DNA of 63,149 nucleotides, the filler included, from Octopus bimaculoides (taxonomy: Eukaryota), in the NCBI RefSeq assembly GCF_001194135.2. It is 9 parts of 9 records of this genome, joined end to end, with 100 filler letters (N's around TTAATTAATTAA, not from the genome) between each part and the next. Parts side by side here need not be neighbours in the genome. Positions count along the whole stretch, not along the records: positions 34,351 to 44,034 come from NC_068995.1; 8 more parts are not named here. One strand, 5' to 3'. Under the pieces are notes generated by a model. It searched no databases, was not told the DNA's origin, and saw only the letters and a list, made by a program, of their open reading frames with translations. The position numbers and the translations under genes are program-made. Every line of letters starts with the position of its first letter. Position 1 is the first letter of the stretch. Shown piece by piece: positions 35,517-39,508 of the stretch.

Positions 35517-35553
35517 TCTTTCTGTTGAAGAGCGTAGCTCGAAACGTCAAAGA
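35517..35553 (+). ncRNA. Minimal type I hammerhead-like motif (variant core CUGUUGA)
   Basis: Stem I TCTTT/AAAGA; core CTGTTGA plus A; stem II GAGC-gta-GCTC; GAAA; palindromic ACGT stem III; GUC cleavage triplet at 35546-35548. Confidence 0.65.
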
Positions 35554-35713
35554 CTTTCCGTATTCCCGAGCGTCATACTAATATATACTTTTGTTATTTN
35601 NNNNNNNNNNNNNNNNNNNNNNNNNNNNNNNNNNNNNNNNNNNNNNNNNNNNNNNNNNNTATATATATATATATATATATATATCTGTAAAAATATGTGA
35701 CACTTATTCGGTA

Positions 35714-35783
35714 GCCATGATAAAACTCTGAGTTTCAGATGCTGGGGCAGAAACCCACACCGGCATCTCTTCAGTTATCTGGC
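35714..35783 (-). ncRNA. Type I hammerhead-like motif
   Basis: - strand reads GCCAGATAA CTGAAGA GATGC..GCATC T GAAA CTC-A-GAG TT TTATC-A-TGGC. Stem I is 9 bp with one bulge, stem II at least 5 bp, near-palindromic stem III, GUU triplet. Confidence 0.7.
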
Positions 35784-36360
35784 CATTGAAAATTCCTATG
35801 AAAATGACCCTGGAAATGGAACAAGAACGTAACAGGCAACAACAAAACATTCGGACAGTAGGTGATACAAAAGAGGACAGGAAAAAACAAAGATGGGTCA
35901 TTCAGAGCTTTCAGTCTTTAGTCAAGCAGCAGAACATCTTTGCAGTTTCAGCCAGTTAATCTCGAGACTGCTCTAATCTGACCGGCCCCAAGGAAATCTA
36001 AGCTAAGAGCACTAGATTATTTGGAAGAAAGCAAGCGAGTGACTATGTATATATAATTATACACATTTGTGTATATGCGCACATGTGCTTGCCTGCGTAT
36101 CTGTGTAATAGATGATTTTGATATTGTTAGACATTTTATAATTTTCCATTCTGGTTGTCTACTTATGAGGAAGTATTATTTTTAATGTTTCTACAGCAAT
36201 TATTTCAGACCCACCCCCACCATCAAGCAAGAAAATTAAAATTCTAAGTGATAACCATTGTCAAATTTGACAGTTGCGAATAAAAATAAAACATTTTTTA
36301 GAATTTTCATTTTAATGGCTTTTCAAAAAATGTTTTTTCATTTTTTTTCTTTTTTTGCAG

Positions 36361-36480
36361 AAAACAAGTCAGGTGGGAAAACAAATCTATGCAATGGTGT
36401 CAAGATTTATTTCTCAATTAAATGAGCAACCGGAAGTCGATAAAAGCGTTGTGATAAAGTCATTGCAGGAAGCATCGGCA
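36361..36480 (+). CDS. Internal exon, same gene (KTSQVGKQIYAMVSRFISQLNEQPEVDKSVVIKSLQEASA)
   Basis: Long poly-T acceptor TTTTTTGCAG|, donor GCA|GTAAGT, exactly 120 nt, phase 0-0. The other two frames contain stops. Confidence 0.8.
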
Positions 36481-36815
36481 GTAAGTGATAGATGGAACTC
36501 ATTGTTTAACCTAATTCTTCCCTCATTATAGATATATTCAAAATTCCTGCAAAATAAAATATAATTCCTGATTAATTAACTAGAAGTGCACGAAGTAGTG
36601 TTGATTGCCATATAGTGTGCACAAATATGTTCAACATGCTCGTATACTTTCAGATGTGTTAAATGTAATTGTACACCTACATTTCAATTAGCGTTGCTTA
36701 GTGTGCTTAATTAATTCCAAACTGACGAAGTTTTGCATCTATAAGCAAATTTAATATTTGTTGTTTAAATACAAGAGCGGTTGTTCTTAGCAGTCTATGA
36801 ACAACGGATTCGGTG

Positions 36816-36862
36816 TTCGTAGCTGATGAGGCTTAAGGATGCAGAAACATGTGTCGTACGAA
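36816..36862 (+). ncRNA. Hammerhead-like motif, monomer 1
   Basis: TTCGTAG CTGATGA GGC-TTAAGGAT-GCA GAAA CATGTG TC GTACGAA. Stem I is 6 bp with a G.G mismatch next to the core; palindromic ACATGT in stem III. Confidence 0.6.
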
Positions 36863-37157
36863 TCTGTTGATGTTATTCATAGCCCAGTGTGATTGTTTCT
36901 TACACACATCGTCTATAAGGACAATTTATTTCCCCAAATAATTTTAGCAGCGAAGGTCTCTCCACGTCTGAGTATACACGAATGTGTTAAATACAATCGT
37001 ATTATTGTACCCAGCTCTATTTCAAAACATTGCTCCTTGATGTGCCTGTATTTAATTGATTGTAGCTTCACTAAGCTTCGTACACTTGAGCAAATTTACT
37101 GTTTGCTTTTTAAATGTAAGAACAGTGTTGTGCGGTTGCAGATAATGGATTCAACAT

Positions 37158-37200
37158 CTGTAACTGATGAAGCATAACAATGCAGAAACACGTCATATAG
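37158..37200 (+). ncRNA. Hammerhead-like motif, monomer 2
   Basis: CTGTAA CTGATGA A GCAT-AACA-ATGC A GAAA CAC GTC ATATAG. Stem II is 4 bp; stem I is 5 bp including a G.U pair. Confidence 0.55.
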
Positions 37201-37686
37201 TCTAATGATACCATTCATAGCCTACGTTGTGTTTTTCACACACACACACACTGTCTATTAGAAAAAATTCTCTTCTAAGACAGTTTCTGTCCAATGTCTG
37301 TCCAAGTGTGTTAAATATAAATACACAGCTTTACTTTAATCAATACTCCTTATTGTGTCTCTGGTTAATTAATTCCAGCTTGACTAAGCTTTGTACCCAT
37401 CAGTAAATGTAATATTTGCTGTTTAACTATAAGAACAGCAGTTGTTAGTATGCTGCGAATGATGGGTCTGGTGTTGTCGCTAATGAAGCACATCAGCACA
37501 GTAACTCGTTTCTTTCTGTCCAAAGACGTCAGTCACAACTCATCATGGTGTTCTTTGTTTTACACACATTATATGTATAAGGAGAATTTCTCTCCCAAGA
37601 CAGTTTCCGCAGCAAAGGTCTGTCCATGTTCGAGTGAATACAAGCGTGTTAAATATAATTGTGATCACGTGATCGACCAGACTGTC

Positions 37687-37950
37687 AGAGAGAGAGAGAG
37701 AGAGATACAGACAGACAGAAAGGAAAAGAGCGAAAGAGAGAGAGAGAGAGATAGCAAGAGAAAGAGAGAGAGAGAGAGAGGGAGGGAGAGAGAGGGAGAA
37801 CGAAGAAGAGAAAGAAAAACAGACAAAGAGAATGGGAGAGAGCAAAAGAGAGAGATAGTAAGAGAGTGAGAGAAAGAGAGACCGACAGACGGAATGGGAG
37901 AGAGCGAAAGAGAGAAAGAGAGAGATAGTAAGAGAGAGATTGAGAAAGGG
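37687..37950. repeat. GA-rich microsatellite / low-complexity tract
   Basis: Read directly. Confidence 0.9.
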
Positions 37951-37994
37951 AGAGGCGGGAAGGTTTTGTAGGAGGTTTTCAGCTATGTAATCTT

Positions 37995-38200
37995 ACTTCA
38001 TAATTCCTTGAGCAAGTACTTCCTTTCCAGTCTCCTGCTAAAATGTTATTCTCTATCAACAGCTCTTCACCAATGGCATAACAATCTACAAAGAAATCTC
38101 TCTCTATTCCCTCTTGAGGATAATGGAGAACAATTATGTTGTTGTAAGTACAATCATTTTGTTTACGACTTTCGGACATAGACAATATGTTGCTCACAGA
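37995..38200 (-). mobile_element. Probable LINE apurinic-type endonuclease fragment (L1/Tx1-like)
   Basis: NILSMSE resembles the xIxLQE motif, and YPQEGIERDFF...NNILAGDW resembles YAP..ER..FF...IxAGDFN. Confidence 0.5.
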
Positions 38201-38309
38201 CCAGTGATGTCGATATAAATACGATATATAAACACTGTGATGTATGTGTGTAGAGGTGTTGTATAGACCGAGCTATCTATGTACATCTTATGTAGAATTG
38301 TAGTGTGTT

Positions 38310-38628
38310 GAAGGTGTGTGGCTTGGTTGTTTGGGTATTCGGCTGACAATCATAAGGGTGTGAGTTCAATTTCTGGCGGTGAGTTGTGTCTTCGAGCAAG
38401 ACATTTTATTTCACGTTGCTCCAGTCCACTTAGCTGGCAAAAACGAGTTGTACCCGTATTTCAAAGGACCAGCCTTGTCACATTCTGTGCCCTGCTGAAT
38501 CTCTCTGAGAACAATGTCAAGGGTATGCATGTCTGTGGAGTACTCAACCACTTGCATGTTAGTTTCATGAGCAGACTTTTCCGTTGATCGGATCAACTGG
38601 GACACTCATCATTGTAACCGATGGAGGC
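38310..38628 (+). mobile_element. tRNA-derived SINE family C variant
   Basis: tRNA-like head with GTGAGTTCAATT; core GAGCAAGACATTTTATTTCACGTTGCTCCAGTCCACT.AGCTGGCAAAAA shared with 39525-39872 and 54416. Confidence 0.8.
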
Positions 38629-38847
38629 CACGTTTTTTTTTAGACATTATATAGAAATGGGTGTGCATATAGATATTATATATATTATGCCTGTGATATG
38701 TATATAAATATTACATAAAGCAGTGATGTGTACAATGATGTTATATTGATCTGAGCTATGTATGTAGATGTTATATTAATGGTTATGCGTATATAAGTGC
38801 GATATCAGACTGTGGTGTGTATATAGACACACCACAGAAATGGATGT

Positions 38848-39167
38848 ACATTATTTACATTATTTACATTTGATGGATATTTGACCTCATCTTGTTTGTT
38901 GTTAACACATCTTTTCGGTTAATATACCCTCCAGCCTTCATCAGGTGTCTTGGGGAAATTTCGAACTTGGGTTCTCATTCCTAAGGTATTTTTCGATGTT
39001 ATTATTATTATTATTATTCATGTCATTGCCTGGAATTGAACTTGGGGTTAGTACGCCATATGCCCGTGGTGTTAACAACAAACAAGATGAGGACAAATAT
39101 CTGTCAAATGTAAATAATGTAAATAAAGTGCATAATTCCTCACCTCTTAAATATAGAACTGTATTAT
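38848..39167 (-). mobile_element. Short non-autonomous element: tRNA-like head, (AAT)n, Penelope-type hammerhead tail, inverted tail copy; 12-bp TSD
   Basis: Direct repeat AGAAATGGATGT at 38836-38847 and 39168-39179. ~64-bp inverted repeat at 38845-38908 and 39069-39132. - strand GACAC CTGATGA AGGC..CC GAAA at 38949-38904. B-box GTTCAATTCC. Confidence 0.8.
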
Positions 39168-39457
39168 AGAAATGGATGTGTATATAGATGCTATGTAGAA
39201 CTAGAGTGTATATCCATATGTGGTGTGTACATAGATATTATATGGCTCTGCAGTTTGTACACAAATATGGTGAGTGTGTAGATATTTCATACACTTGTGA
39301 TGTATTTATAGATATTTTATCCTTTTTTTCTACAGGTACAAGGCATAAAATTTTGCGTGAGGGGGCCATTTGACTTCATTGATCCTAATACTCAACTGGT
39401 ACTTATTTGGCGAGTAGGGTGGCTTATATATTTTGCTTCAAGATATCAATGATTTTA

Positions 39458-39508
39458 ATGAAGTGAAGAGTTTTCAAATGTGAGTCGAAACACCTGTGGT
39501 GTATTTGG
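39458..39508 (+). ncRNA. Degenerate hammerhead-like motif (C3G)
   Basis: GTGAAGA G...AGTC GAAA CAC-CTGTG-GTG TA TTTGG. Stem III is intact; core and stem II are mutated. Confidence 0.35.

What the first reader, a model, noticed from the sequence alone, without database searches (positions are those of the whole stretch)
35517..39508. Hotspot of six hammerhead-like motifs inside two introns of one gene
Motifs lie at 35517 (+), 35714 (-), 36816 (+), 37158 (+), 38904 (-) and 39458 (+), from at least four unrelated sequence contexts. I found no motif of comparable quality elsewhere in the 63 kb (seen by eye). Minimal type I hammerheads with palindromic stem III are established features of Penelope-like elements and retrozymes and can cleave as dimers. 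Every motif sense to the pre-mRNA has a core or stem lesion. This fits selection against pre-mRNA cleavage, or weak dimer-dependent activity affecting splicing (inference).
Basis: partly seen in the sequence, partly recalled or inferred. Interest (0 to 1): 0.75.

Follow-up and report, generated by a model that had tools for sequence, protein, structure and literature searches.

The report
Decayed hammerhead relics in octopus introns
The six hammerhead-like motifs are real strings, but they are mutated leftovers of repeat elements plus chance look-alikes in the introns of an Octopus bimaculoides plexin gene; they drift neutrally, so this is an ordinary finding.

Summary
The piece is the 3' end of the Octopus bimaculoides plexin-B2-like gene. 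All six strings exist, but they lie in three annotated introns, not two, and come from five contexts.

- **Motifs 3 and 4** are paralogues at the unit junction of an old ~335-nt tandem repeat of 3.3 units. A third copy is already dead.
- **Motif 5** is a degenerate copy of a multi-copy foldback repeat ("M"). Other copies of M carry an intact Penelope-type minimal hammerhead.
- **Motif 2** sits in repeat "X"; a CpG-restored ancestor would have a canonical core.
- **Motif 1** sits in the 3' region of a LINE-associated repeat whose other full copy also has U at the essential A6.
- **Motif 6** is unique sequence; the resemblance comes from one species-specific CpG>TpG change.

No motif passes a strict minimal-hammerhead descriptor. 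Orthologous introns of O. sinensis and O. vulgaris show the array motifs diverging at the neutral rate (7.6% against 7.5%), with independent core-killing changes. Antisense copies are as damaged as sense copies. Argonauta introns lack all of these elements.

Local excess is marginal: two independent exact cores in 4 kb. The retroelement origin is partly right. Selection against cleavage, or a splicing role, is unsupported.

The parts
34819..34963 (+). Exon of the plexin-B2-like host gene (the other exons are 36361-36482, 38063-38143 and 41133-41210, the last ending in TAA)
   Evidence: The joined translation is 99% identical to P0121 residues 689-828. The same exon order is seen in Argonauta hians. 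The cluster contains XP_052829393.1, plexin-B2 [Octopus bimaculoides].
35204..35480 (-). 5'-truncated LINE fragment (C-terminal part of ORF2, ...YWERLKQLRLYSLERRRERY...) with a (TA)n tail at 35206-35254
   Evidence: 162 homologues, including an Octopus vulgaris protein. The alignment shows the conserved YWERL..LYSLERRRERY block.
35488..35599 (+). Copy of repeat 'F1', cut by the assembly gap. It holds motif 1 at 35517-35553: UCUUU|CUGUUGA|A|GAGC-GUA-GCUC|GAA|ACGU|C|AAAGA
   Evidence: Paralogues are at L006 2585-2657, L007 23885-23985 and 10792-10868, and L008. The other independent full copy also reads CUGUAGA, with U at A6. In L007 and L006 the repeat lies downstream of a LINE-type ORF2 C-terminus, and two of three other copies end in (TA)n.
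35600..35659 (.). Assembly gap (60 N) inside the intron
   Evidence: The same gap is in assembly GCA_001194135.2. The flanks are consistent with a missing F1 tail plus TA repeat.
35692..35990 (-). Copy of repeat 'X' ending at (TA)n. It holds motif 2 at 35718-35779: GAUAA|CUGAAGA|G-AUGC...GCAU-C-U|GAA|ACU-CAG-AGU|U|UUAUC. An inverted partial X copy lies at 35060-35203 (+).
   Evidence: Descriptor hit with one lesion. The paralogue at L001 12253-12371 reads CCAAAAC where the window reads CUGAAAC. Inverted repeat I3. The region 35115-35814 has no counterpart at the orthologous site of O. sinensis or O. vulgaris.
36560..37665 (+). Tandem repeat 'T': about 3.3 units of 320-342 nt, roughly 70-75% identical in the repeat blocks found (60% mean column identity over the full four-unit alignment), GC 36%
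   Evidence: Repeat families D7, D9, D10 and D14, unit alignment, GC content. It is present at 92% identity in O. sinensis and O. vulgaris.
36816..36862 (+). Motif 3: UUCGUAG|CUGAUGA|G|GCUU-AAGG-AUGC|A|GAA|AC-AUGU-GU|C|GUACGAA. The core is intact. There is a G.A mismatch at 10.1/11.1, a U.U mismatch in helix II, and a G.G mismatch at 1.1/2.1.
   Evidence: Orthologues: GGA in O. sinensis, and stem I lost two pairs by CpG decay in both sister species.
37157..37201 (+). Motif 4, the paralogue of motif 3: UCUGUAA|CUGAUGA|A|GCAU-AACA-AUGC|A|GAA|AC-AC-GU|C|AUAUAGU. There is an A.A mismatch at 10.1/11.1, and the helix III loop has only 2 nt.
   Evidence: It fails my descriptor. The O. sinensis orthologue has a 22-nt deletion that removes the 5' strand of stem I and C3.
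37473..37517 (+). Third, dead copy of the array motif (CUAAUGA ...
   Evidence: Unit alignment. It is dead in all three species.
38844..39133 (-). Degenerate copy of foldback repeat 'M' (inverted arms 38844-38908 and 39069-39133). It holds motif 5 at 38904-38949 on the minus strand: GACAC|CUGAUGA|A|GGCUG..UAACC|GAA|AAGA|U|GUGUU
   Evidence: Inverted repeat I1. Family copies and their alignment. The family consensus is GACAC|CUGAUGA|A|GGCUG-GAGGGUAUAU-CAGCC|GAA|ACGU|U|GUGUU. The window copy differs in helix II and helix III. The O. sinensis orthologue has CCGAUGA and CAAAAC instead.
39458..39508 (+). Motif 6: GUGAAGA ... GAAAC-ACC-UGU-GGU-GU, in unique intronic sequence just upstream of a SINE-like insertion (39535-39872)
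   Evidence: Two lesions, and stem II essentially absent. O. vulgaris reads GCGAAGA, O. sinensis has a 14-nt deletion, and stem III differs. No paralogues cover the motif.

Best explanation
The 'hotspot' is a repeat-rich stretch of three introns of the Octopus bimaculoides plexin-B2-like gene. Several different repeats inserted there, and some of them descend from hammerhead-bearing retroelements.

- **Motifs 3 and 4**, plus a third dead copy, mark the unit junctions of an old ~335-nt tandem array. The array is most likely a decayed retrozyme- or satellite-type type I hammerhead repeat.
- **Motif 5** is a dead copy of a SINE-like foldback family (M). Its source elements carry a Penelope-type minimal hammerhead.
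- **Motif 2** lies near the 3' end of repeat X. Its CpG-restored ancestor would have a canonical core.
- **Motif 1** lies in a LINE-associated 3' region and is non-canonical in the other full family copy as well (U at A6).
- **Motif 6** is a chance resemblance.

In their source elements such ribozymes cut multimeric or read-through transcripts to unit length, often as dimers through a palindromic helix III. This is established for Penelope-like elements and retrozymes and is inferred here. The local copies are inert fossils that evolve neutrally. They have no demonstrable role in the host gene.
For: **Host gene and intron content**
- The gene model is confirmed.
- Argonauta introns measure about 624, 320 and 750 nt and contain none of the repeats.

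**Tandem array**
- The array and the paralogy of motifs 3 and 4 are shown.
- Its architecture matches the metazoan type I hammerhead: helix I of 6 bp, helix II of 4 bp with a tetraloop, and helix III of 2 bp with a palindromic ACGU loop in the sister-species state of unit 1.
- Three double compensatory changes occur between units: at 1.5-2.5, at 1.6-2.6 and at the fourth pair of helix II.
- Divergence between species is neutral: 11/145 inside the motifs against 7.5% for the array. Lethal changes differ between lineages.

**Family M**
- Six independent copies share the hammerhead consensus. Copies that meet a strict minimal-hammerhead descriptor are the only hits in about 360 kb of fetched loci. 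There were none in 200 shuffles of 108 kb.

**Family X**. **Family F1**. **Motif 6 orthologues**.

**Density and literature**
- Background density of the motif signature is given.
- Penelope-like elements are abundant in Octopus (PMC13282606).
Against: - No copy was tested for cleavage.
- The array motif has a purine.A mismatch where G10.1-C11.1 is nearly universal. Its unit RNA is not unusually self-paired (z=-0.44). No other genomic copy of the unit was seen in about 290 kb of octopus DNA. It could therefore be a local duplication with a chance motif.
- Families X and F1 rest on only two independent copies each.
- No Penelope-like ORF (RT or GIY-YIG) was found near any copy, so the link of M and X to Penelope-like elements rests on motif type and insertion architecture only.
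- The exact-core signature is locally enriched against shuffles (3 against 0.10), which leaves room for something non-random beyond repeat content.
Confidence: 0.75

Rival explanations
1. Pure chance. None of the local motifs, including the tandem-array pair, ever belonged to a ribozyme. They are coincidental CUGANGA...GAAA strings in AT-rich repeats.
For: - The relaxed descriptor gives 0.55 one-lesion hits and 7.2 two-lesion hits per 9.4 kb of shuffled sequence.
- Real octopus DNA carries 0.7-1.0 one-lesion hits per 10 kb.
- There are no Rfam hits.
- The folds are not more stable than shuffles.
- The array motif breaks the G10.1-C11.1 rule, and no dispersed family of the array unit was found.
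Against: - The family M consensus passes a strict descriptor that never fired in 200 shuffles of 108 kb.
- The array motif sits at the same place in each unit, with compensatory changes in helices I and II and a palindromic helix III.
- The exact-core count in the 4-kb region is 3 against 0.10 in shuffles.
Confidence: 0.12
2. The motifs matter to the host gene: either they were disabled by selection against cutting the plexin pre-mRNA, or they keep a weak dimer-dependent activity that modulates splicing.
For: - All four sense-strand motifs carry lesions.
- A vertebrate survey reports non-LTR retrozymes excluded from introns and exons (abstract of 10.64898/2026.07.22.740005).
- Two tandem copies 341 nt apart could in principle interact.
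Against: - The antisense motifs 2 and 5 are equally damaged.
- Divergence is at the neutral rate, with lineage-specific lethal hits and deletions.
- The segment with motifs 1 and 2 is absent at the orthologous site in the sister species.
- An intact sense-strand minimal hammerhead persists inside the span of the same gene in O. sinensis and O. vulgaris.
- The helix III segments of units 1 and 2 differ in length (8 and 6 nt), so a heterodimer would be out of register (read directly from the sequence).
Confidence: 0.05
3. The ~335-nt array is a still-active retrozyme locus that yields unit-length linear or circular RNAs from the intron.
For: - Unit size, tandem arrangement and low GC fit non-LTR retrozymes (PMC7229834).
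- Units 1 and 2 of O. bimaculoides keep intact CUGAUGA, GAA and C17.
Against: - The units share only about 60-75% identity, so the array is old.
- One of three motifs is dead in all three species, and others are dead in sister species.
- There is a mismatch at 10.1/11.1.
- The unit RNA is not highly self-paired.
- No other copies were found.
Confidence: 0.05

Closest known systems
Minimal hammerheads of Penelope-like elements (min-HHR; Cervera & de la Pena 2014, PMC4209133)
   Same: The family M consensus (motif 5 is a dead copy) has these shared features:
- an exact CUGAUGA/GAAA core
- one unpaired nucleotide between A9 and G10.1
- a G10.1-C11.1 pair
- a helix II of 5-6 bp
- a helix I of 5 bp
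- a helix III reduced to the palindrome ACGU, implying action as a dimer

Insertions come with an adjacent inverted 5'-truncated copy, as described for Penelope-like elements (PMC8557442). Motif 1 shares the extra A, the ACGU palindrome and the short helix I.
   Different: No Penelope RT/GIY-YIG ORF or pseudo-LTR was found next to any copy. M looks like a SINE-type unit with a tRNA-like B box rather than a pseudo-LTR. The window copy is mutated in helices II and III. Motif 1 and the other full F1 copy have U at the essential A6.
Non-LTR retrozymes and hammerhead satellites of animals (Cervera & de la Pena 2020, PMC7229834; also newt satellite 2 and Schistosoma Sm-alpha, the latter two from my own knowledge)
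   Same: The array 36560-37665 consists of tandem units of about 335 nt with GC of 36%. A type I hammerhead-like motif sits at each unit junction. Helix I has 6 bp, helix II has 4 bp, and helix III has 2 bp with a palindromic loop.
   Different: - A purine.A mismatch replaces G10.1-C11.1.
- There are only 3.3 units, with about 60-75% identity between them.
- The unit RNA is not highly self-paired.
- No dispersed family was detected in about 290 kb.
- One motif is dead in all species.
- No expression data are available.
Rfam hammerhead families
   Same: They share the CUGANGA / GAAA core and three-helix topology.
   Different: No window motif, and not even the intact M control, reaches E<=10 with these models.

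Membership tests
Hammerhead ribozyme (catalytic core) | Invariant C3 U4 G5 A6 N7 G8 A9 ... G12 A13 A14, an A15.1-U16.1 pair, and H17 (any base except G) | tested here: inconclusive
   Met by motifs 2, 3 and 4. The insertion or mismatch next to G12 in these motifs is judged under the G10.1-C11.1 row below. Not met by motif 1 (A6>U), motif 5 (helix III destroyed), motif 6 (C3>G) or the third array copy.
Hammerhead ribozyme (catalytic core) | A G10.1-C11.1 pair closing helix II directly on the core | tested here: not met
   Motifs 3 and 4 have G.A and A.A. Motif 2 has G.U plus a bulged C. Motif 5 has helix II mutated (CAGCC>UAACC). Motif 6 has no helix II.
Hammerhead ribozyme (catalytic core) | Self-cleavage at H17 | not testable with these tools
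   This needs in vitro transcription and cleavage assays or RNA-end mapping.
Penelope-type minimal hammerhead (PMC4209133) | Unpaired nucleotide between 9 and 10.1, a G10.1-C11.1 pair, a palindromic 15.2-16.2 or loop 3, and a short helix I | tested here: not met
   The strict descriptor gives 0 hits in the window piece. It hits only the intact family M copies in L007 and L008, and gave 0 hits in 200 shuffles. The window M copy (motif 5) and motif 1 each fail on at least one core or helix feature.
Penelope-type minimal hammerhead (PMC4209133) | Location in the pseudo-LTR of an element encoding RT plus GIY-YIG endonuclease | tested here: inconclusive
   No GIY-YIG motif and no Penelope-like ORF was found among ORFs of 180 aa or more in about 280 kb of octopus loci. 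The single Y/FxDD hit is a LINE-type RT fragment. Only an inverted adjacent copy and a (TA)n target are seen.
Non-LTR retrozyme (PMC7229834) | Tandem repeats of about 170-400 bp with low GC | tested here: met
   3.3 units of 320-342 nt with GC of 0.36.
Non-LTR retrozyme (PMC7229834) | Bona fide type I hammerhead in each unit | tested here: inconclusive
   The architecture and compensatory changes fit. The 10.1/11.1 mismatch and one dead unit do not.
Non-LTR retrozyme (PMC7229834) | Highly self-paired unit RNA | tested here: not met
   MFE is -71.4 against -69.4 +/- 4.7 kcal/mol for shuffles, z=-0.44.
Non-LTR retrozyme (PMC7229834) | [quoted passage not shown] | tested here: inconclusive
   No copy was found outside the orthologous arrays in about 290 kb, but the sample is tiny. 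Expression cannot be tested here.
Rfam hammerhead covariance models | Score at or above the gathering threshold | tested here: not met
   No hammerhead hit even at E<=10. The models also miss the intact M control.

The most novel reading that the evidence does not exclude
The ~335-nt array has been kept in the same plexin intron of three Octopus species since before their split. That split is dated to 13-33 My (PMC13282606). The novel reading is that the array still produces RNA whose weakened hammerheads (purine.A at 10.1/11.1, palindromic helix III) cleave at a low rate as dimers. This would release unit-length or circular RNAs, or tune splicing of the host pre-mRNA.

A milder novel reading concerns family M. 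It may be a previously undescribed SINE-like foldback carrying a Penelope-type hammerhead on both strands.
Probability: 0.05. Interest if true: 0.6.

Novelty: new member of a known kind. Interest (0 to 1): 0.25.

Why it matters
As a host-gene feature it does not matter. The motifs behave as neutral fossils, and the apparent hotspot reflects repeat-rich octopus introns.

The case is useful in two ways.
- It shows that relaxed hammerhead matching produces about one good-looking hit per 10 kb in octopus DNA. Family and orthologue comparison is what separates relics from chance.
- It points to octopus repeat families (M, possibly X and the array unit) that carry Penelope- or retrozyme-type hammerheads. 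Two full-text literature searches plus one supplement search found no description of hammerhead ribozymes in octopus (the repeat-annotation paper, does not mention them). A genome-wide census would be a modest addition to the known spread of these ribozymes.

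Tried and rejected
- **Rfam.** cmscan at E<=10 on the whole piece and on a 461-nt slice gave no hammerhead hit. I do not count this as evidence of absence, because the intact M control is missed too.
- **Host protein search.** A search with my five joined exons found nothing in the word-indexed database. It was solved by the exhaustive HMMER search.
- **Protein annotation.** Pfam and PDB searches of the host C-terminus and of the repeat ORFs were uninformative.
- **First idea for motif 1.** I first took it to be antisense to the CR1-like LINE ORF. 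I rejected this because homology to the LINE family stops near 35480, and 35488-35599 belongs to a different repeat, F1.
- **Contig look-ups.** P0121 and P0124 were not on record. Cluster members gave the loci instead.
- **Assembly gap.** The v2 O. bimaculoides assembly does not close it.
- **Structure of the array unit.** It is not more stable than shuffles. None of the window motifs folds better than shuffles.
- **tRNA search.** ARAGORN finds no tRNA in M or in the piece. The tRNA-like B box in M is read by eye only.
- **Penelope ORFs.** A scan of the fetched loci found none.
- **Covariance model.** I did not build one. The M copies vary too little to add anything beyond the descriptor.

Full report
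**Where the piece comes from**

Places 34351-44034 carry, on the + strand, the last exons of a plexin-like gene. The exons are 34819-34963, 36361-36482, 38063-38143 and 41133-41210 (TAA). All are in phase 0 with AG/GT borders.
- An exhaustive HMMER search found an 828-aa protein that is 99% identical over these exons. It skips my candidate exon 39335-39397.
- Its cluster contains XP_052829393.1, plexin-B2 [Octopus bimaculoides], and the protein has a plexin cytoplasmic domain.
- The host gene model is therefore sound. The six motifs lie in three annotated introns: motifs 1 and 2, then 3 and 4, then 5 and 6.

**The assembly gap (35600-35659)**

The gap is inside the first of these introns, so reading frame is not an issue, and no motif spans it.
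- The v2 assembly has the same 60 N.
- The left edge cuts a repeat copy (F1) about 45 nt before its usual end. In two of three other copies examined that end is followed by (TA)n.
- The right edge begins in (TA)12.
- The two sides are thus compatible with one continuous locus lacking a short tail plus TA repeat. This is inference.

**Do the motifs exist, and are they more than chance?**

All six strings are present.
- Three have an exact CUGANGA...GAAAC core: 36823+, 37164+ and 35774-.
- One has CUGAUGA...GAAAA (38944-).
- Two have a core mismatch: 35522+ with A6>U and an extra A, and 39463+ with C3>G.

I wrote an RNAmotif-like descriptor (three helices plus core, counting lesions).
- It finds two hits with at most one lesion, against 0.55 expected from dinucleotide shuffles (P=0.085).
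- It finds 18 hits with two lesions, 9 of them in a GAT microsatellite, against 7.2 expected. Motifs 4 and 5 fail even this descriptor.
- In about 260 kb of other octopus DNA (unrelated and orthologous loci), one-lesion hits occur at 0-1.0 per 10 kb. The exact-core signature occurs at 0.3-1.0 per 10 kb.
- The 4-kb region has three exact cores, against 0.10 in shuffles. Two of the three are paralogues, so there are two independent events in a window delimited after the fact.
- Rfam gives no hammerhead hit at E<=10. It also misses an intact control, so that negative carries little weight.

**Motifs 3 and 4: an old tandem array**

Places 36560-37665 hold about 3.3 units of 320-342 nt. Identity between units is roughly 70-75% in the repeat blocks found and 60% mean column identity over the full alignment; GC is 36%. 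Each unit junction carries the motif; the third copy (37473-37517) reads CUAAUGA...GUAAC and is dead.

Parsed as a type I hammerhead, the motif has:
- a helix I of 6 bp
- a helix II of 4 bp with a tetraloop
- a helix III of 2 bp with a 4-nt loop. In unit 1 of the sister species the whole helix III segment reads ACACGUGU, a perfect palindrome.

This is the architecture described for classical metazoan type I hammerheads (PMC4209133). Between units there are three double compensatory changes: C-G to U-A, U-A to C-G, and U-A to C-G.

Against a real ribozyme:
- all units have a purine.A mismatch where G10.1-C11.1 is expected
- the unit RNA is not unusually structured (z=-0.44)
- no other copy of the unit occurs in about 290 kb

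I rate a true hammerhead-repeat ancestry at roughly 55-60%.

**Orthologues of the array**

The array is present in O. sinensis and O. vulgaris at 92% identity.
- Inside the three motifs, O. bimaculoides differs from O. vulgaris at 11 of 145 sites (7.6%), against 7.5% for the surrounding sequence.
- Lesions are lineage-specific. O. sinensis unit 1 has GAA>GGA. Both sister species lost two stem I pairs by CpG decay. O. sinensis unit 2 has a 22-nt deletion that removes stem I and C3.

This is neutral decay.

**Motif 5: family M**

The motif lies in an inverted-repeat element, 38844-39133. Other copies sit at L006 296, L007 12246/12049/42038/41814, and their L008 counterparts. Their consensus is GACAC|CUGAUGA|A|GGCUG-GAGGGUAUAU-CAGCC|GAA|ACGU|U|GUGUU.

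The consensus shows every sequence hallmark of the Penelope-type minimal hammerhead in PMC4209133:
- a G10.1-C11.1 pair
- a palindromic 15.2-16.2
- a short helix I

A strict descriptor for these features hits only M copies in about 360 kb of fetched loci, and never in 200 shuffles of 108 kb. It gives no hit in the window.

The window copy is mutated in helix II (CAGCC>UAACC) and in helix III (ACGU>AAGA). Its O. sinensis orthologue is killed differently, by CCGAUGA and CAAAAC. An intact sense-strand copy sits within the span of the same gene in O. sinensis and O. vulgaris.

**Motif 2: family X**

It lies near the 3' end of repeat X (35692-35990, minus strand), next to (TA)n.
- The only other independent copy (L001 12253-12371) reads CCAAAAC where the window reads CUGAAAC. 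An ancestral CCGAAAC, a CpG decayed differently in each copy, would give G10.1-C11.1 with a bulged C and a canonical core. This is inference from two copies.
- The segment 35115-35814, which holds motifs 1 and 2, has no counterpart at the orthologous site in the sister species.

**Motif 1: family F1**

I first took it to be antisense to the neighbouring CR1-like LINE fragment at 35204-35480. That homology stops near 35480.
- Places 35488-35599 belong to another repeat. In two loci this repeat lies downstream of a LINE-type ORF2 C-terminus, and in two of three other copies it ends in (TA)n.
- It has the extra A, a GAGC/GCUC helix II and the ACGU palindrome. However, both independent copies that keep the first core box have U at the essential A6.
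- At this lesion level chance hits are common, so it remains undecided.

**Motif 6**

It sits in unique intronic sequence. O. vulgaris reads GCGAAGA, O. sinensis has a 14-nt deletion, and the neat stem III is specific to O. bimaculoides. It is a chance resemblance created by drift.

**Wider comparison**

The Argonauta hians orthologue has introns of about 624, 320 and 750 nt with none of these repeats. The octopus introns were expanded by insertions. Penelope-like elements are a recognised and once-expanding part of Octopus genomes, and the O. vulgaris / O. bimaculoides split is dated to 13-33 My (PMC13282606).

**Verdict**

The proposed selection against pre-mRNA cleavage, or a splicing role, has no support:
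- lesions affect antisense and sense copies alike
- divergence is at the neutral rate
- lesions are lineage-specific
- an intact sense-strand copy is tolerated in the same gene in sister species

This is an ordinary repeat-rich intron region containing ribozyme fossils.

Noticed in passing
L007 11955-12340 (O. sinensis); degenerate copy at window 38844-39133: Repeat family M is a 386-nt foldback (MFE -214 kcal/mol, z=-24). Its order is a tRNA-like B box (GAGTTCAATTCC), then (AAT)n, a body, the minimal hammerhead and a tail. It is preceded by an inverted copy of its own 3' ~115 nt, so each strand carries one intact Penelope-type hammerhead. Rfam sees it only as a sub-threshold MIR7533-like hairpin.
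   Followed up: partly
window 39335-39397 (+): A candidate 63-nt phase-0 exon (VQGIKFCVRGPFDFIDPNTQL) has AG/GT borders. It is absent from the annotated O. bimaculoides protein and has no counterpart in Argonauta. It is probably not a real exon.
   Followed up: partly
window 35204-35480 (-), 41560-42130 (-): There are two decayed LINE ORF2 remnants. One is a CR1-like C-terminus (YWERL..LYSLERRRERY) with a (TA)n tail. The other is a fragment reading ...KIFWDFPIQTDQVLECNRPDLV...; Pfam gave no significant hit for either.
   Followed up: partly
window 35206-35254, 35660-35684, and the flanks: Three different retroelement fragments (the LINE, F1 and X) all abut (TA)n tracts within 500 nt. This suggests repeated insertion into, or tailing with, a TA microsatellite. 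The same tract coincides with the assembly gap.
   Followed up: partly
window 43440-43704: A 119-nt tandem repeat of 2.2 copies at 93% identity lies downstream of the gene. It is also present in O. vulgaris (L008 about 97382-97842).
   Followed up: no
window 37687-37954 and 42630-42868: A long GA-rich microsatellite sits directly after the tandem array, and there is a (GAT)n tract of about 79 units. The latter produces nine spurious hammerhead-descriptor hits.
   Followed up: no
window 38310-38627 (+) and 39539-39862 (-); 40880-41070, 41270-41450: These are copies of abundant octopus SINE-like repeats, with many paralogues in L006-L008. One pair forms an inverted repeat (38383-38436 / 39738-39791) that flanks the M element and motif 6.
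   Followed up: no
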